64,000 nt of DNA. It comes from Phaeosaccion multiseriatum. Its lineage: Eukaryota; Protista; Ochrophyta, other classes. Location of the stretch: NCBI GenBank assembly GCA_965112735.1, contig OZ218952.1, positions 4,774,001-4,838,000 on the forward strand, read 5' to 3'. This document shows, piece by piece, positions 1 to 10,749 of this stretch (the first letter of the stretch is position 1; every line of letters starts with the position of its first letter). The notes beneath the pieces were generated by a model. It saw only the letters and a list, made by a program, of their open reading frames with translations, searched no databases and was not told the DNA's origin. Both the position numbers and the translations under genes were made by a program.

Positions 1-3000
1 ACAGATGGGCCATTTCAACCCCACAGAACAGAGTGTACAATCCCACCGAGCACACCAGAGACGCCCGGTGGACTCATGACGACCATGGTGGGACCATTTC
101 AACCCCGCTGGCCCAGAGAAAGCACACTTCAACCCTCCCGTGTCGCGATCGGGCGCCAGATGACCCACCGGGGCTCACAGATGGGCCATTTCAACCCCAC
201 AGAACAGAGTGTACAACCACACCGAGCACACCAGAGACGCCCGGCAGACTCATGACGACCATGGTGGGACCATTTCAACCCCACTGGCCCAGAGAAAGCA
301 CTCTTCAACCCTCCCGTGTCGAAATCAGGCGCCAGATGACCCACCGGGGCTCACAGATGGGCCATTTCAACCCCACAGGACAGAGTGTACAATCACACCA
401 AGCACACCAGAGACGCAAGGCAGACTCATGACGACCATGGTGGGACCATTTCAACCCCGCTGGCCCAGAGAAAGCACACGTCAACCCTCCCGTGTCGAAA
501 TCTGGCGCCAGATGACCCACCGGGGCTCACAGATGGGCCATTTCAACCCCACAGAACAGAGTGTACAACCCCACCGAGCACACCAGAGACGCCCGGCGGA
601 CTCATGACGACCATGGTGGGACCACTTCACCACCAATGGCCCAGAGAAAGCACTCTTCAACCCTCCCGTGTCGAAATCTGGTGCCAGATGACCCACCGGG
701 GCTCACAGATGGGCCATTTCAACCCCACAGAACAGAGTGTACAACCACACCGAGCACACCAGAAACGCACGGCAGACTCATGACGATCATGGTGGGACAA
801 TTTCACCACCACTGGCCCAGAGAAAGCACAGTTCAACCCTCCCGTGTCGCGATCGGGCGCCAGATGACCCACCGGGGCTCACAGATGGGCCATTTCAACC
901 CCACAGAACAGAGTGTACAACCATACAGGGCACACCAGAGACGCACGGCAGACTCATGACGACCATGGTGGGACCATTTCACCACCACTGGCCCAGAGAA
1001 AGCACACTTCAACCCTCCCGTGTCGAAATCAGGCGCCAGATGACCCACCGGGGCTCACAGATGGGCCATTTCAACCCCATACAACAGAGTGTACAACCAC
1101 ACCGAGCACACCAGAGACGCACGGCAGACTCATGACGACCATGGTGGGACCATTTCAACCCCGCTGGCCCAAAGAAAGCACACTTCAACCCTCCCGTGTC
1201 GAAATCGGGCGCCAGATGACCCACCGGGGCTCACAGATGGGCCATTTCAACCCCACCGAACAGAGTGTACAACCACACCGAGCACACCAGAGACGCCCGG
1301 CGGTCTCATGACGACCATGGTGGGACCACTTCACCACCAATGGCCCAGAGAAAGCACTCTTCAACCCTCCCGTGTCGAAATCGGGCGCCAGATGACCCAC
1401 CGGGGCTCACAGACGGGCCATTTCAACCCCATAGAACAGAGTGTACAATCACACCGAGCACACCAGAGACGCCCGGCGGACTCATGACGACCATGGGGGG
1501 ACCATTTCAACCCCGCAGGCCCAGAGAAAGCACAGTTCAACCCTCCCGTGTCGAAATCAGGCGCCAGATGACCCACCGGGGCTCACAGATAGGCCATTTC
1601 AACCCCACAGAACAGAGTGTACAATCACACCGAGCACACCAGAGACGCCCGGCGGACTCATGACGACCATGGTGGGACCATTTCAACCCCGCTGGCCCAG
1701 AGAAAGCACACTTCAACCCTCCCGTGTCAAAATCAGGCGCCAAATGACCCACCGGGGCTCACAGATGGGCCATTTCAACCCCACAGAACTGAGTGTACAA
1801 TCACACCGAGCACACCAGAGAGGCCTGATAGACTTATGACGACCATGGTGGGACCATTTCAACCCCGCTGGCCCAAAGAAAGCCCTCTTCAACCCTCCCG
1901 TGTCGAAATCAGGCGCCAGATGACCCACCGGGCTCACAGATGTACCATTTCAACCCCATACAACAGAGTGTACAACCACACCGAGCACACCCGAGACGCC
2001 CGGCAGACTCATGACGACTATGGTGGGACCATTTTACCACCACTGGCCCGGACAAAGCGCACTTCAACCCTTCCGTGTCGCGATCGGGCGCCAGATGGCC
2101 CCCCGGGGCTCACAGATGGGCCATTTCAACCCCACAGAACAGAGTGTACAATCACACCGAGCACACCAGAGAGGCCTGATAGACTCATGACGATCATTGT
2201 GGGACCATTTCACCCCCACTGGCCCAGAGAAAGCACACTTCAACCCTCCCGTGTCGAAATCAGGCGCCAGATGACCCCCCGGGGCTCACAGATGGGCCAT
2301 TTCAACCCCACCGAACAGAGTGTACAACCACACCGAGCACACCAGAGACGCCCGGCGGACTCATGACGACCATGGTGGGACCATTTCAACCCCACTGGCT
2401 CAGAGAAAGCACTCTTCAACCCTCCCGTGTCGAAATCAGGCGCCAGATGACCCACCGGGGCTCACAGATGGGCCATTTCAACCCCACAGAACAGAGTGTA
2501 CAACCACACCGAGCACACCACAGAGGCCTGATAGACTCATGACGACTATGGGGGGACCATTTTAACCCCGCTGGCCCAGAGAAAGCACAGTTCAACCCTC
2601 CCGTGTCGAAATCAGGCGCCAAATGACCCACCGGGGCTCACAGATGGGCCATTTCAACCCCACAGAACAGAGTGTACAATCACACTGAGCACACCAGAGA
2701 CGCACGGCAGACTCATGACGATCATGGTGGGACCATTTCAACCCCACCGACCCAGAGAAAGCACACTTCAACCCTCCCGTGTCGAAATCAGGCGCCAGAT
2801 GACCCACCGGGGCTCACAGATGGGCCATTTCAACCCCACAGAACGGAGTGTACAACCGCACCGAGCACACCAGAGACGCACCGCAGACTCATGACGCCCA
2901 TGGTGGGACCATTTCAACCTTGCTGGCCCAGAGAAAGCACACTTCAACCCTCCCGTGTCGAAATCAGGCGCCAGATGGCCCCCCGGGGCTCACAGACGGG

Positions 3001-6000
3001 CCATTTCAACCCCACCGAACAGAGTGTACAACCACACCGAGCACACCAGAGACGCCCGGCGGCCTCATGACGACCATGGTGGGACCATTTCACCCCCACT
3101 GGCCCAGAGAAAGCACACTTCAACCCTCCCGTGTCGAAATCAGGCGCCAGATGACCCCCCGGGGCTCACAGATGGGCCATTTCAACCCCACAGAACAGAG
3201 TGTACAATCACACCGAGCACACCAGAAACGCCCGGCAGACTCATGACGACCATGGTGGGACCATTTCAACCCCACCGACCCAGAGAAAGCACACTTCAAC
3301 CCCCCCGTGTCCAAAATCACTAGGCGCCAGAAGACCCACCGGGGCTCACAGATGGGCCATTTCAACCCCATAGAACAGAGTGTACAACCACACCGAGCAC
3401 ACTAGAGACGCACGGCGGACCCATGACGAGCGTGGTGGGACTATTTCACCACCACTGGCCCAGAGAAAGCACAGTTCAACCCTCCCGTGTCGAAATCGGG
3501 CGCCAGATGACCCACCGGGGCTCACAGATGTACCATTTCAACCCCATACAACAGAGTGTACAACCACACCGAGCACACCCGAGACGCCCGCCAAACTCAT
3601 GACGACCATGGTGGGACCATTTTACCACCACTGGCCCGGACAAAGCGCACTTCAACCCTCCCGTGTCGCGATCGGGCGCCAGATGGCCCCCCGGGGCTCA
3701 CAGATGGGCCATTTCAACCCCACAGAACAGAGTGTACAACCACACCGAGCACTCCAGAGACGCACGGTAGACTCATGATGACCATGGTGGGACCATTTCA
3801 ACCCCACTGGCCCAGAGAAAGCACCATTCAACCCTCCCGTGTCGCGATCGGGCGCCAGATGGCCCACCGGGGCTCACAGATGGGCCATTTCAACCCCACA
3901 GAACAGAGTGTACAATCACACCGAGCACACCAGAAACGCACGGCAGACTCATGACGACCATGGTGGGACCATTTCAACCCCGCTGGCCCAGAGAAAGCAC
4001 ACTTCAACCCTCCCGTGTCGAAATCAGGCGCCAGATGACCCACCGGGGCTCACAGATGGGCCATTTCAACCCCACCGAACAGAGTGTACAACCACACCGA
4101 GCACACCAGAGACGCACGGCTGACCCATGACGACCATGGTGGGACCATTTCAACCCCGCTGGCCCAGAGAAAGCACACTTCAACCCTCCCGTGTCGAAAT
4201 CAGGCGCCAGATGACCCACCGGGGCTCACAGATGGGCCATTTCAACCCCACAGAACAGAGTGTACAACCACACCGAGCACACCAGAGACGCACCGCAGAC
4301 TCATGACGCCCATGGTGGGACCATTTCAACCCCGCTGGCCCAGAGAAAGCACACTTCAACCCTCCCGTGTCGAAATCAGGCGCCAGATGGCCAACCGGGG
4401 CTCACAGATGGGCCATTTCAACCCCACCGAACAGAGTGTACAACCACACCGAGCACACCAGAGACGCACGGCGGCCTCATGACGACCATGGTGGGACCAT
4501 TTCACCCCCACTGGCCCAGAGAAAGCACAGTTCAACCCTCCCGTGTCGAAATCAGTAGGCGCCAGATGACCCACCGGGGCTCACAGATGGGCCATTTCAA
4601 CCCCACAGAACAGAGTGTACAACCACACCGAGCACACCAGAGGGGCCCGGCGGACTCATGACGATCATGGTGGGACCATTTCACCCCCACTGGCCCAGAG
4701 AAAGCACACTTCAACCCTCCCGTGTCGAAATCAGGCGCCAGATGACCCACCGGGGCTCACAGATGGGCCATTTCAACCCCATAGAACAGAGTGTACAACC
4801 ACACCGAGCACACCAGAAACGCCCGGCGGACTCATGACGACCATGGTGGGACCATTTCACCCCCGCCGGCCCAGAGAAAGCCCAGTTCAACCCTCCCGTG
4901 TCGAAATCGGGTGCCAGATGACCCACCGGGGCTCACAGATGGGTTATTTCAACCCCACAGAACAGAGTGTACAACCACACCGGGCACACCAGAGACGCAC
5001 GGGAGACTCATGACGACCATGGTGGGACCATTTCACCCCCACTGGCCCAGAGAAAGCACAGTTCAACCCTCCCGTGTCGAAATCGGGCGCCAGATGACCC
5101 ACCGGGGCTCACAGATGGGCCATTTCAACCCCACAGAACAGAGTGTACAACCACACCGGGCACACCAGAGACACACGGCAGACTCATGCCGACCATGGTG
5201 GGACCATTTCACCCCCACTGGCCCAGAGAAAGCACACTTCAACCCTCCCGTGTCGAAATCAGGCGCCAGATGACCCCCGGGGGCTCACAGATGGGCCATT
5301 TCAACCCCACAGAACAGAGTGTACAACCACTCCGAGCACACCAGAGACGCCCGGCAGACTCATGACGACCATGGTGGGACCATTTCAACACCACTGGCCC
5401 AGAGAAAGCACAGTTCAACCCTCCCGTGTCGAAATCAGGCGCCAGATGACCCACCGGGGCTCACAGATGGGCCATTTCAACCCCACAGAACAGAGTGTAC
5501 AACCACACCGAGCACACCAGAGACGCCCGGCGGACTCATGACGATCATGGTGGGACCATTTCAACCCCGCTGGCCCAGAGAAAGCACACTTCAACCCTCC
5601 CGTGTCGAAATCAGGCGCCAGATGACCCACCGGGGCTCACAGATGGGCCATTTCAACCCCACCGAACAGAGTGTACAACCACACCGAGCACACCAGAGAC
5701 GCACGGCTGACCCATGACGACCATGGTGGGACCATTTCAACCCCGCTGGCCCAGAGAAAGCACACTTCAACCCTCCCGTGTCAAAATCAGGCGCCAAATG
5801 ACCCACCGGGGCTCACAGATGGGCCATTTCAACCCCACAGAACTGAGTGTACAATCACACCGAGCACACCAGAGAGGCCTGATAGACTCATGACGACCAT
5901 GGTGGGACCATTTCAACCCCGCTGGCCCAAAGAAAGCCCTCTTCAACCCTCCCGTGTCGAAATCAGGCGCCAGATGACCCACCGGGCTCACAGATGTACC

Positions 6001-6824
6001 ATTTCAACCCCATACAACAGAGTGTACAACCACACCGAGCACACCCGAGACGCCCGGCAGACTCATGACGACTATGGTGGGACCATTTTACCACCACTGG
6101 CCCGGACAAAGCGCACTTCAACCCTTCCGTGTCGCGATCGGGCGCCAGATGGCCCCCCGGGGCTCACAGATGGGCCATTTCAACCCCACAGAACAGAGTG
6201 TACAATCACACCGAGCACACCAGAGAGGCCTGATAGACTCATGACGATCATTGTGGGACCATTTCACCCCCGCCGGCCCAGAGAAAGCCCAGTTCAACCC
6301 TCCCGTGTCGAAATCGGGCGCCAGATGACCCACCGGGGCTCACAGATGGGCCATTTCAACCCCACAGAACAGAGTGTACAATCACACCGAGCACGCCAGA
6401 GACGCACGGGAGACTCATTACGACCATGGTGTGACCATTTCACCCCCACTGGCCCAGAGAAAGCCCTCTTCAACCCTCCCGTGTCGAAATCAGGCGCCAG
6501 ATGACCCCCCGAGGCTCACAGATGGGCCATTTCAACCCCACAGAACAGAGTGTACAACCACACCGAGCACACCAGAGACGCCCGGCAGACTCATGACGAC
6601 CATGGGGGGACCATTTCAACCACACCGGCCCAGAGAAAGCACACTTCAACCCTCCCGTGTCGAAATCAGGCGCCAGATGACCCACCGGGGCTCACAGATG
6701 GGCCATTTCAACCCCACAGAACAGAGTGTACAACCACACCGAGCACACCAGAGACGCACGGCAGACTCATGCCGACCATGGCGGAACCATTTCAACCCCA
6801 CCGGCCCAGAGAAAGCACAGTTCA
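1..6824. repeat. 176-bp tandem satellite array, block 1 (about 39 monomers; begins before the window)
   Basis: Consensus ACAGATGGGCCATTTCAACCCCACAGAACAGAGTGTACAACCACACCGAGCACACCAGAGACGCCCGGCAGACTCATGACGACCATGGTGGGACCATTTCAACCCCGCTGGCCCAGAGAAAGCACACTTCAACCCTCCCGTGTCGAAATCAGGCGCCAGATGACCCACCGGGGCTC. ORF-track starts recur every 176 bp (33, 209, 385, 561...). Confidence 0.98.
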
Positions 6825-7661
6825 TTGTGTATTTACCCATATAAACTCTTCTCTAAGCTACGACTCTTTGCTGTGCCCCGCATGCCCCACCCAGGAAGCC
6901 CTCGGCCTCCACCCATCGGGATTGCACTTCTCCCCCCTCCAAATGAGCTGACCTTCCCTCTCTCACCCCCCCCCCTCAAGCTATACACTTCATCCGTTGG
7001 TCCGTAAGCTACACACGTGACTCCCCTCGCCCCCGGACCCCCTACCTCCTGCCTGTACTCCGACTCCTCTCTGCGACAGAGCATCGCAATCACTTCACCG
7101 CTCTTACACCAAGCCAGTGTGCCATGGGCTGTCTCTCTCTCGCATCGCATCCTGATGTACAGGCTCACTCGCATGAACTGCATGACTGGTGTAAGCGAGC
7201 AAGCTGGAGTGGTACTCTTTCGTTACCAAAGTCGTCGCTGCCCCCACCAGCCCCCACCTCGCACATCCCTCCTACTCGCTCAGCCCATCTCCTCTGCCAT
7301 GCTCTCCCACGTCTCGCTCCCGACACTCCAGGGCCTCTCCAGCGGCAGGATTCCGCTCTCCTTGCCGAAGGTCGGATCCGTCCTTCGCATGAGGTCCAGC
7401 GCGGTTTGGGACCGGAAGAAGGCTGCTGCCGCCTCCATAAGTCGCTGCTCGATGTCCCGGCCGAGCTGACACCGCCGCGCCCCAGCCAAGGCCTTGTCCA
7501 CCGAAGCAGCGGCCGAGAGAAGCTGCCGCGCAGTCCCGTGGTGGTCTCTGAATATGGCAGCAAGGAGAGGATTGACACCGTCTGATGCCGTGATATCGAT
7601 GGGGGATCCCGCAGAGATGAGACAAGCGACGACGGCCTCGTGTCCATTCTGCGCTGCAATG
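6825..7661. other. Unique 837-bp insert within the satellite, flanked by a 39-bp direct duplication
   Basis: ACCATTTCAACCCCACCGGCCCAGAGAA(A/C)GCACAGTTCA occurs at 6786-6824 and 7662-7700 (1 mismatch) on either side of non-satellite sequence. Confidence 0.85.
7490..7661 (-). pseudogene. 5'-truncated ankyrin-repeat gene fragment
   Basis: Translation IAAQNGHEAVVACLISAGSPIDITASDGVNPLLAAIFRDHHGTARQLLSAAASVDKA matches about two ankyrin repeats. It starts mid-repeat at the satellite junction, and the ORF-track ATG comes from satellite sequence. Confidence 0.8.
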
Positions 7662-7759
7662 ACCATTTCAACCCCACCGGCCCAGAGAACGCACAGTTCA
7701 ACCCTCCCGGGTAGAAATCAGGCGCCAGATGACCTACCGGGGCCCACAGATGGGCCATT

Positions 7760-8111
7760 CAGTCAGAGAGGAGGACGAGTCTTTGTGCGCGCGACACCGC
7801 CCCCCTGGCGGTCCCGCACACACTTCAACCCCTCCCATCTGTCTCCCCGCGGTAGATACCAATGGTTACCCGTCCAATATCTCCCCACTGAGTACACCAT
7901 TCCCCCGGGCCGGGTGAATGCCGCGTTAGCTGCTTTCAGGGCAGCGACTCCTACTCCTCTCCTGCCGATCCTCCTCCGTAACCTATCCCCACCACACCAC
8001 ACCACAAGCACACGAGATATACTCCTGCGCCCCACACCTCTAGTTTCTGACCATCGTCCCTCCCTTGCCAGTCCGCGAAAAAACGTTTTCCCGAGGGGCA
8101 GCGAGAAACAT
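7760..8111. other. Second unique insert (about 350 bp) within the satellite
   Basis: Non-satellite sequence between GGGCCATT (ends 7759) and CCATTTCAACCCC (starts 8112). Contains an internal satellite-like motif GCACACACTTCAACCCCTCCC at 7816-7836. Confidence 0.75.
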
Positions 8112-10170
8112 CCATTTCAACCCCACAGAACAGAGTGTACAATCACACCGAGCACACCAGAGACGCACGGATGACTCATGACGACCATGGTGGGACCATT
8201 TCACCCCCACTGGCCCAGAGAAAGCACACTTCAACCCTCCCGTGTCGAAATCAGGCGCCAGATGACCCACCGGGGCTCACAGATGGGCCATTTCAACCCC
8301 ACAGAACGGAGTGTACAACCACACAGGGCACACCAGAGACGCCCGGCAGACTCATGACGACCATGGTGGGACCATTTCGGCCCCACTGGCCCAGAGAAAG
8401 CACTCTTCAACCCTCCCGTGTCGAAATCAGTAGGCGCCAGATGACCCACCGGGGCTCACAGATGGGCCATTTCAACCCCACAGAACAGAGTGTACAACCA
8501 CACCGACCACACCAGAGACGCCCGGAAGACTCATGACGATCATGGTGAGACAATTTCAGCCCCACCGGCCCAGAGAAAGCACAGTTCAACCCTCCCGGGT
8601 CCGGGGCCCACAGAGGGTGGCCATTTCAACCCCACAGAACGGAGTGCACAACCGCACCGGGCACACCAGAGACGCACGGCAGACTCATGACGACCATGGC
8701 GGGACCATTTCAACCCCGCTGGCCCAGAGAAAGCACACTTCAACCCTCCCGTGTCGAAATCTGGCGCCAGATGACCCACCGGGGCTCACAGATGGGCCAT
8801 TTCAACCCCACCGAACAGAGTGTACAACCACACCGAGCACACCAGAGACGCCCGGCGGACTCATGACGACCATGGTGGGACCACTTCACCACCAATGGCC
8901 CAGAGAAAGCACTTTTCAACCCTCCCGTGTCGAAATCAGGCGCCAGATGACCCACCGGGGCTCACAGATGGGCCATTTCAACCCCACAGAACAGAGTGTA
9001 CAACCACACCGAGCACACCAGAGACGCCCGGCGGACTCATGACGACCATGGTGGGACCATTTCAACCCCGCTGGCCCAGAGAAAGCGCACTTCAACCCTC
9101 CCGTGTCGAAATCAGGCGCCAAATGACCCACCGGGGCTCACAGATGGGCCATTTCAACCCCATAGAACAGAGTGTACAACCACTCCGAGCACACCAGAGA
9201 CGCACGGCAGACTCATGACGACCATGGTGGGACCATTTCAACCCCGCTGGCCCAGAGAAAGCACAGTTCAACCCTCCCGTGTCGAAATCTGGCGCCAGAT
9301 GACCCACCGGGGCTCACAGATGGGCCATTTCAACCCCATAGAACAGAGTGTACAACCACACCGAGCACACCAGAGACGCACGGCGGACCCATGACGACCA
9401 TGGTGGGACCATTTCACCACCACCGGACCAGAGAAAGCACACTTCAACCCTCCCGTGTCCAAATCGGGCGCCAGATGACCCCCCGGGGCTCACAGATGGG
9501 CCATTTCAACCCCATAGAACAGAGTGTACAACCACACCGAGCACACCAGAGACGCCCGGCAGACTCATGCCGACCATGGTGGGACCATTTTAACCCCACT
9601 GGCCCAGAGAAAGCACACTTCAACCCTCCCATATCGAAATCAGGCGCCAGATGACCCACCGGGGCTCACAGATGGGCCATTTCAACCCCACAGAACAGAG
9701 TGTACAACCACACCGAGCACACCAGAGACGCCCGGCGGACTCATGACGACCATGGTGGGACCATTTCAACCCCGCTGGCCCAGAGAAAGCACAGTTCAAT
9801 CCTCCCGTGTCGAAATCAGGCGCCAGATGACCCACCGGGGCTCACAGATGGGCCATTTCAACCCCACAGAACAGAGTGTACAACCACACCGAGCACCCCA
9901 AAGACGCCCGGCAGACTCATGCCGACCGTGGTGGGGCCATTTCAACCCCACCGGCCCAGAGAATGTACAGTTCAACCCTCCCGTGTCGAAATCAGGCGCC
10001 AGATGACCCACTGGGGCCCACAGATGGGCCATTTCAACCACACAGAACAGAGTGTACAACCGCACCGGGTGCACTAGAGACGCAGACTCATGACGACCAT
10101 GGTGGGACCCACCGGCCCAGAGAAAGCACAGTTCAACCCTCCCGCGTCGAAATCAGGCGCCAGATGGCCC
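8112..10170. repeat. 176-bp tandem satellite array, block 2 (about 12 monomers, degenerating at the right edge)
   Basis: Same monomer. Internal deletions near 8590-8620 and 10080-10115. Confidence 0.97.
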
Positions 10171-10749
10171 ACACGCAGGCACCCGCTCCAAACCCCTTGC
10201 ACCCATCCAGACAGACTCGTGTGCCGTACTCGCCCGCTCAAGCAGCGCCGCAGACTCGACCCGCTGTGGAACGGGCGCTCCTGCGTGCTGCTGCGCCGTC
10301 AGCGACTCTGCAGGCGGCGAAAGGGCTGCCTCCTCGCGCACAACCGCCACAACTGCCTCGACAGCACGGCACGGCTGCTGCGCCTGCTGCTCCGCCGTCT
10401 GCTGTACAGCAGGACGCTGCGGCTGCTCCTGCTGCTCCTTGTGCTGCTGCCGTGGCAGTGACGGCGGCTCCACCGCTGAAGGCAGTAGTGTTGCCTCCTT
10501 GTGCACAGCCTCCTCTCCTCTACTACCACATGACACTGCTGCTGCTCCTGCTGTTGCTGCTGCTGCTTCTCCGGCGGCGGCAGCTGCTCGGCCGCGGAAG
10601 GCGCTAGCGCAGCCTCCTTGTGCGCACCCTCCACGACTACCTCGACAGCACGGCACTGCTGCTGCGCCTGCTGCTGCGCCGCCGCCATCTCCGTGTGCGC
10701 ACCCGCAACAACTGCATGCTCCTGACGCAGAGGCTGCTGCAGCTCTGCA

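What the first reader, a model, noticed from the sequence alone, without database searches (positions are those of the whole stretch)
6786..7700. Gene-fragment capture inside the satellite: ankyrin piece flanked by a 39-bp target-site-like duplication
Seen: an 837-bp unique insert sits between two copies of the same 39-bp monomer segment (1 mismatch). Read on the minus strand, it starts mid-ankyrin repeat, loses ankyrin character after VDKA, continues with broken coding-like sequence, and ends in an AT-rich tail (TTTATATGGGTAAATACACAA). There is no RT, transposase, LTR or poly(A). Established: site-specific non-LTR elements of the CRE/SLACS group make long TSDs of tens of bp in tandem arrays, and double-strand-break repair can insert templated patches. 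Inference: the array may act as a landing pad that archives fragments of genes or invaders, possibly as a small-RNA source. A simple template switch within a tandem array would give the same flanks.
Basis: partly seen in the sequence, partly recalled or inferred. Interest (0 to 1): 0.75.

Follow-up and report, generated by a model that had tools for sequence, protein, structure and literature searches.

The report
Ankyrin gene fragment pasted into satellite
An 837-base piece from the end of a highly repeated ankyrin gene was pasted once into a chromosome-end-type satellite repeat of this alga, most likely as a DNA-repair patch; it is a dead gene fragment, and nothing shows that the satellite collects genes.

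Summary
An 837-bp insert (6825-7661) interrupts the 176-bp satellite and is flanked by the same 39-bp monomer segment (6786-6824 and 7662-7700, 1 mismatch).

The insert is not unique. It is a collinear copy of the 3' end of a tandem ankyrin gene family with at least 40 copies (86-93% identity) on contigs C15, C9, C2 and C7. It keeps the last 127 codons, the family's natural stop and about 455 bp of downstream sequence. The "broken coding" part is the family's conserved C-terminal tail. The "AT-rich tail" is copied from one donor subfamily.

Donor homology runs past both ends of the insert. Junctions show 0-2 bp of microhomology. There is no poly(A) tail, and I found no APE-type LINE in the genome.

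I found four other independent interruptions, one more in this window and three in 14 other arrays of this mostly subtelomeric satellite. All are ordinary transposable elements, at assorted monomer phases.

Best reading: a single break-repair capture of an abundant gene sequence. Whether the template was DNA or cDNA is unresolved, and a LINE-like retrocopy is the main rival. The landing-pad or archive idea is not supported.

Earlier notes of this scan already describe the donor ankyrin arrays on other DNA. Interest is low.

The parts
1..6824 (+). 176-bp satellite array, left part (runs off the window start)
   Evidence: TRF period 176, 38.7 copies, 91% matches. The same family forms arrays 4-16 kb from many contig ends.
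6786..6824 (.). Left copy of the 39-bp flanking duplication (monomer segment)
   Evidence: 1 mismatch to 7662-7700. No other monomer is closer than 2 mismatches.
6825..7661 (-). 837-bp captured fragment: the 3' end of a tandem ankyrin gene family (a pseudogene piece)
   Evidence: at least 40 genomic copies at 86-93% identity, collinear over positions 21-835; donors continue past both ends.
7280..7660 (-). Retained coding part: last about 1.7 ankyrin repeats, the conserved 72-residue C-terminal tail and the natural stop (7280-7282)
   Evidence: Three private replacements (R>C, T>N, G>A) fall at scaffold positions that are invariant in 16 donors.
6825..7279 (-). About 455 bp homologous to the donors' sequence downstream of the stop, including the templated AT-rich end
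   Evidence: the end matches the L012/L017 donor subfamily. Donors continue with about 100 more conserved bases.
7662..7700 (.). Right copy of the 39-bp flanking duplication
7701..7761 (+). Satellite continuing in phase after the right copy
   Evidence: monomer positions 3-101.
7762..8110 (+). Separate, unrelated insertion: about 349 bp of a dispersed element family, with a 5-bp flank duplication (CCATT)
   Evidence: about 30 copies at 70-81% identity; it belongs to the terminal region of a larger element with 168-bp split direct repeats; monomer phase is 101 on the left and 97 on the right.
8112..10172 (+). Satellite array, right part

Best explanation
A single chromosome break, or a pair of staggered nicks about 39 bp apart, in one monomer of an interstitial array of the subtelomere-type 176-bp satellite was mended with a patch. 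The patch was 837 bp copied from a member of the very abundant tandem ankyrin gene family. It comprises the last 127 codons, the stop and about 455 bp downstream.

The ends were joined with little or no homology. Filling in the staggered ends, or re-annealing out of register in the tandem array, left the 39-bp monomer segment on both sides.

The fragment has no start, no promoter of its own and no mobility. It is a dead gene piece that has since picked up a few private changes.

Shown: the donor family, the collinearity, the internal (not terminal) position of the piece in the donor unit, the junction sequences, and the uniqueness of the event. Inferred: the break-repair mechanism, and that the duplication arose in the same event. 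Unresolved: whether the patch was copied from DNA or from a transcript.
For: - Donor family: at least 40 copies at 86-93% identity in clusters on C15, C9, C2 and C7, with no other copy in this window.
- Donors are tandem same-strand genes with 460-555-aa ankyrin-repeat ORFs. All 16 compared copies keep the frame, the stop and a near-invariant tail.
- Donor-donor homology continues beyond both ends of the insert, so the piece has no ends of its own.
- Junctions: 2-bp microhomology (CA) on the left; 0-1 bp plus a possible 2-nt filler on the right.
- No tail, TIR, LTR, RT, tRNA or Rfam feature.
- No APE-type LINE in the genome: PF14529 gave 0 hits and PF03372 gave 4 single-locus hits.
- The flank copies are each other's closest relatives among 52 monomer segments.
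- Only 14 of about 830 positions are private to the insert (1.7%), which is compatible with 1 difference in the 39-bp flanks.
- The best donor is only 93% identical, so a mis-assembly of donor reads is excluded.
- DSB repair by patches templated from distant loci is documented in human cells and germline (PMC5110952; PMC2671141).
Against: Classical repair patches (class 2 templated insertions) lack flank duplications and often show microdeletions (PMC5110952). A 39-bp duplication is more typical of nick-pair mechanisms such as target-primed reverse transcription.

The piece is exactly what a 5'-truncated cDNA would look like: the gene's 3' end, in one piece.

The flank similarity alone is only modestly significant.

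No read-level or population evidence was available.
Confidence: 0.55

Rival explanations
1. It is a 5'-truncated retrocopy. An ankyrin mRNA was reverse-transcribed at a nick in the satellite (target-primed reverse transcription) by a non-LTR retrotransposon enzyme acting in trans. Second-strand cleavage 39 bp away gave a true target-site duplication.
For: The 3'-terminal gene piece has one orientation, a 5' truncation and a long flank duplication. Earlier notes of this scan report a young R2-like (restriction-like endonuclease) LINE in this genome (not tested here). From my own knowledge, some elements of that group make TSDs of tens of bp.
Against: There is no poly(A) or other tail. The last bases are templated from donor DNA, and donor homology continues for about 100 bp past the end. 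There is no T-rich nick site. No APE-type LINE was found. The reported R2-like element is site-specific for another target. Intron loss cannot be scored because the donor region is intronless and collinear.
Confidence: 0.25
2. It is a replication template switch (FoSTeS/MMBIR-like). A stalled nascent strand in the array jumped to an ankyrin gene on another chromosome, copied 837 bp, and returned to the array 39 bp behind the point where it left.
For: Both junctions have only 0-2 bp of microhomology. Returning to a tandem array at an offset naturally gives a flank duplication.
Against: A single long inter-chromosomal template with clean return is uncommon for such events. Nothing distinguishes it from the patch model with the present data.
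Confidence: 0.12
3. The satellite is a dedicated landing pad or archive that collects fragments of genes or invaders, possibly to make small RNAs.
For: The window's array holds two unrelated insertions only 100 bp apart. Three of five insertion junctions fall at monomer positions 30-48.
Against: Of the 5 independent interruptions found, 4 are ordinary transposable elements and 1 is this fragment. They lie at different phases, with flank overlaps of 5, 13, about 14-19 and 39 bp, and one 10-bp loss. No other host-gene fragment was found, and most arrays are uninterrupted. Small RNAs are not testable here.
Confidence: 0.04
4. It is an assembly artefact or chimeric join.
For: Repeats are error-prone to assemble, and no reads were available.
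Against: The insert is at most 93% identical to every other copy, with 14 private positions. It therefore cannot be donor reads mis-placed. The satellite phase is coherent on both sides.
Confidence: 0.03

Closest known systems
Templated sequence insertions / DSB-repair patches (class 2 TSIPs, plant 'filler DNA', repair-mediated duplications)
   Same: A stretch copied from a distant genomic locus sits at a break site, with no transposon hallmarks and minimal microhomology or a short filler at the junctions (PMC5110952; PMC2671141).
   Different: It has a 39-bp flank duplication, which class 2 events lack. At 837 bp it is at the long end of the range. The target is a tandem satellite, so the duplication may reflect out-of-register rejoining.
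LINE-mediated processed pseudogenes / class 1 TSIPs
   Same: A 5'-truncated 3' gene piece with a flank duplication of 5 bp or more.
   Different: No poly(A) tail, no T-rich target and no detectable APE-type LINE in the genome. The end is not shown to be a transcript end.
Site-specific RLE non-LTR elements (CRE, SLACS, R2 group)
   Same: A long duplication of tens of bp in a tandem repeat target.
   Different: No RT or nuclease ORF, no element ends, a single occurrence, and no shared insertion site across monomers or arrays.
Gene-fragment capture by Helitrons or Pack-type DNA transposons
   Same: A host gene piece at an ectopic site.
   Different: No terminal inverted repeats, no Helitron termini or hairpin, and no carrier sequence. 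The whole insert is collinear with the donor.

Membership tests
Processed pseudogene / LINE-mediated retrocopy | Target-site duplication flanking the insert | tested here: met
   39 bp with 1 mismatch. The copies are each other's closest relatives among 52 monomer segments. Background for 1 or fewer mismatches is 9-11%.
Processed pseudogene / LINE-mediated retrocopy | Poly(A) or other non-templated 3' tail | tested here: not met
   The sense-strand end ...ACACAA is templated from donors of the L012/L017 type.
Processed pseudogene / LINE-mediated retrocopy | Loss of donor introns | tested here: inconclusive
   The donor is collinear and intronless over the copied 837 bp.
Processed pseudogene / LINE-mediated retrocopy | Insert 3' end coincides with the donor mRNA polyadenylation site | not testable with these tools
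   No transcript data. The family's tail has no relatives in the protein collection.
Processed pseudogene / LINE-mediated retrocopy | Autonomous non-site-specific (APE-type) LINE present in the genome | tested here: not met
   PF14529 gave 0 matches. PF03372 gave 4 single-locus matches.
DSB-repair templated patch (class 2 TSI / filler DNA) | Insert templated from a distant locus, without transposon ends | tested here: met
   Donors lie on C15, C9, C2 and C7. Donor homology passes both insert ends.
DSB-repair templated patch (class 2 TSI / filler DNA) | NHEJ-type junctions (microhomology, short filler) | tested here: met
   Left junction: 2 bp (CA). Right junction: 0-1 bp plus a possible 2-nt filler.
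DSB-repair templated patch (class 2 TSI / filler DNA) | No flank duplication (often a microdeletion) | tested here: not met
   A 39-bp duplication is present. It could equal out-of-register rejoining in the array.
CRE/SLACS/R2-type site-specific non-LTR element | Encodes RT and a restriction-like endonuclease, or is a truncated copy of such an element | tested here: not met
   The only domain is ankyrin. Other ORFs have no Pfam hit.
CRE/SLACS/R2-type site-specific non-LTR element | Recurrent insertion at one position of the repeat unit | tested here: not met
   There is a single occurrence genome-wide. Other arrays carry other elements at other phases.
piRNA-cluster-like archive | Accumulation of many diverse captured fragments in the locus type | tested here: not met
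   5 interruptions in the 15 arrays examined. 4 are whole or partial TEs and 1 is a gene piece.
piRNA-cluster-like archive | Small-RNA production from the locus | not testable with these tools
   No small-RNA data.

The most novel reading that the evidence does not exclude
The subtelomere-type satellite is a preferred target of a nick-pair-making enzyme, for example the genome's R2-like retrotransposon machinery acting off-target. That enzyme occasionally copies abundant host transcripts into the satellite with unusually long target duplications and no poly(A). This would be a poly(A)-independent route to retrocopies in an alga that lacks L1-type elements.
Probability: 0.07. Interest if true: 0.5.

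Novelty: new member of a known kind. Interest (0 to 1): 0.2.

Why it matters
It shows that the striking "gene inside a satellite" is a single dead fragment of the genome's most abundant gene family, not a capture system. The event is a clean natural example of an ectopic 0.8-kb insertion with both junctions readable. It could help in studying break repair in stramenopile algae, and it serves as a presence/absence marker. It has no evident function.

Tried and rejected
- Higher-order repeat test. I tried to use array structure to decide between duplication and 137-bp deletion. The lag-23 signal comes only from one segmental duplication (5731-6257 matches 1677-2203) and does not reach the insertion site.
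- Donor identification by tree. The tree is star-like and the insert is a mosaic of family alleles, so no donor is resolved.
- Transcript 3' ends through protein searches. The full ORF only hit generic ankyrin proteins at 42% identity or less. The family-specific tail hit nothing in either length class.
- Fetching the whole C15 cluster and more arrays. I did not try another route.
- Helitron, Pack-type or integrase-mediated capture. Rejected: no termini, and the duplication is far longer than the 5 bp seen for the neighbouring element.
- Linking inserts A and B as one event. Rejected: each has its own in-phase flank overlap, and their order differs from the donor loci where a B-like element lies beside an ankyrin gene.

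Full report
**Observation.** The window opens in a 176-bp satellite (TRF: 38.7 copies, 91% matches) that runs to 6824, resumes at 7662-7761, and resumes again at 8112-10172. Between 6825 and 7661 lies 837 bp of non-satellite DNA. The 39 bases before it (6786-6824) and after it (7662-7700) are the same monomer segment with one mismatch. Upstream of the right copy and downstream of the left copy there is no further similarity, so the duplicated unit is exactly 39 bp.

**Is the duplication more than chance?** In a tandem array, a resumption 39 bp behind the break point is formally either a 39-bp duplication or a loss of 137+176n bp.
- Among 52 copies of this segment in the window, the two flanks are each other's nearest relatives. 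The next best is 2 mismatches to the left copy and 3 to the right copy, and their joint haplotype occurs nowhere else.
- Against that, 9% of all monomer pairs and 11% of adjacent pairs differ by 1 or fewer in this segment.
- A higher-order-repeat test failed, because the only lag-23 signal is a local segmental duplication far from the site.
- I take the duplication as probable, not proven.

**What the insert is.** On the minus strand, an ORF (7280-7666, whose first two codons are satellite) matches Pfam Ank over its curated cut-off and Ank_2 just under its own. The insert is not unique.
- The assembly holds at least 40 collinear copies at 86-93% identity. They are clustered on C15 (2.34-2.49 Mb), C9 (0.43 and 1.79-1.81 Mb), C2 (2.0-2.2 and 4.80-4.85 Mb) and C7.
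- The donors are same-strand tandem genes 2.3-6 kb apart. A stitched 12-kb piece of C15 has three of them.
- Their ORFs are 460-555 aa and consist of ankyrin repeats.
- All 16 donor copies compared keep the reading frame and the same stop. They share an almost invariant 72-residue tail after the last repeat, and they vary at scattered positions within the repeats.
- This agrees with earlier notes of this scan describing fast-evolving tandem ankyrin arrays in this genome.
- The tail has no relatives in the protein collection. The repeats hit only generic ankyrin proteins.

- The sequence after VDKA is the family's conserved tail, read in frame to the natural stop at 7280-7282. It is not "broken coding".
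- The remaining 455 bp match the donors' downstream sequence.
- The AT-rich end is templated, and matches the donor subfamily of L012 and L017.

**State of the fragment.** It carries three private replacements at scaffold positions invariant in all donors (R>C, T>N, G>A). Only 14 private positions occur in about 830 (1.7%), spread evenly. It therefore looks like an unconstrained, fairly young pseudogene piece. One difference between the 39-bp flanks fits that age.

**Anatomy of the junctions.** Donor copies remain homologous to one another beyond both ends of the insert. On the coding side they run on into further ankyrin repeats. On the downstream side they share about 100 more conserved bases before two spacer types diverge. 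The insert is thus an internal piece of the gene unit with no ends of its own.
- The left junction shares 2 bp (CA) between satellite and the closest donor type.
- The right junction shares 0-1 bp, with perhaps a 2-nt filler.
- There is no poly(A), TIR, LTR, RT, transposase, tRNA or Rfam feature.
- The genome shows no APE-type LINE: PF14529 gave none and PF03372 gave four single loci.
- Earlier notes report a site-specific R2-like LINE with another target. I did not test this.

**The satellite and its other inserts.** The monomer family forms arrays 4-16 kb from the ends of many contigs. These are in plus orientation at left ends and minus at right ends. A few interior arrays exist, including this one at C3:4.77 Mb. 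The right end of C9 carries TTAGGG repeats. I scanned 14 further array loci. Together with the second insertion in this window, the other interruptions are:

| Interruption | Location | Nature | Flank overlap |
|---|---|---|---|
| 349 bp | Window 7762-8110 | Terminal region of a dispersed element with 168-bp split direct repeats | 5 bp (CCATT) |
| 294 bp | C9 array, present twice within a 2594-bp array duplication | Dispersed element with at least 40 copies | 13 bp, 2 mismatches |
| 665 bp | C6 array | Young repeat with at least 50 copies at 95-98% identity | 10-bp loss |
| 6.1 kb | C13 array | Retroelement encoding RT, RNase H, a 3'-5' exonuclease and integrase | Noisy, about 14-19 bp |

This fragment is therefore the only host-gene piece. 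Phases and overlaps are heterogeneous, and most arrays are uninterrupted. That contradicts the landing-pad or archive idea.

**Mechanism.** The best-supported account is a one-off repair of a break or staggered nick pair, with a patch copied from an abundant sequence family and joined by end-joining. This matches the documented templated-insertion and repair-mediated-duplication phenomena (PMC5110952; PMC2671141).
- The 39-bp duplication is atypical for such patches. It fits nick-pair mechanisms or an out-of-register return to the array.
- A trans-acting reverse transcriptase (retrocopy) therefore remains a serious rival. It is weakened by the absent tail, the templated end inside continuing donor homology, and the missing L1-type machinery.
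- A replication template switch is a DNA-only variant that I cannot separate from the patch model.
- Mis-assembly is excluded by the insert's own divergence.

**Limits.** No reads, transcripts or small RNAs were available.

**Verdict.** The object is an ordinary ectopic gene-fragment pseudogene in a satellite: a new instance of a known kind of event. Interest is low.

Noticed in passing
window 7762-8110: A second, unrelated insertion lies 100 bp from the first. It is about 349 bp of a dispersed family (about 30 copies at 70-81% identity) with a 5-bp flank duplication (CCATT). Fuller copies (L025 1404-2000 and onward) have 168-bp split direct repeats and over 1 kb of internal sequence. It may be the non-autonomous partner of the Ngaro-like elements noted earlier in this scan.
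   Followed up: partly
G000 contig ends; L030-L043: The 176-bp satellite is mostly subtelomeric, 4-16 kb from contig ends on C5-C9, C11, C13 and C16. Its polarity is fixed: plus at left ends and minus at right ends. Interior arrays at C3:4.77 Mb (this window), C10:0.85 Mb and C9:2.26 Mb all have the left-end orientation and may mark old chromosome-end events.
   Followed up: partly
L039:2520-8626 (G000:C13:3318520-3324626): A 6.1-kb retroelement sits in a satellite array. It has one 1842-aa ORF carrying RT, RNase H, a DNA_pol_A_exo1 3'-5' exonuclease and integrase, and a long perfect hairpin at its 5' end. The layout was already noted elsewhere in this scan (s1-331321).
   Followed up: partly
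L004:1052-1502 (G000:C15:2376717-2377167) versus window 6825: In one C15 donor, a B-like element is inserted about 8 bp from the donor position where the window's fragment ends. A 25-bp indel polymorphism among donors starts at the same spot. This may be a local breakage hot spot or a functional boundary such as the transcript end.
   Followed up: no
window 5731-6257 and 1677-2203; L030 4245-4903 and 6839-7497: Near-identical multi-monomer segmental duplications occur inside arrays. One spans 23 monomers in the window. One of 2594 bp on C9 carries a 294-bp element, showing recent unequal exchange within arrays.
   Followed up: partly
L031 7590-7893 (G000:C9 right end): The telomere (TTAGGG)n is joined directly to a long (CAGGC)n tract.
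   Followed up: no
monomer positions 30-48: Three of five independent insertion junctions in this satellite fall within the same about 19 bp of the monomer (around AAGCACACTTCAACCCTCC). There are too few events to call this a hot spot.
   Followed up: no
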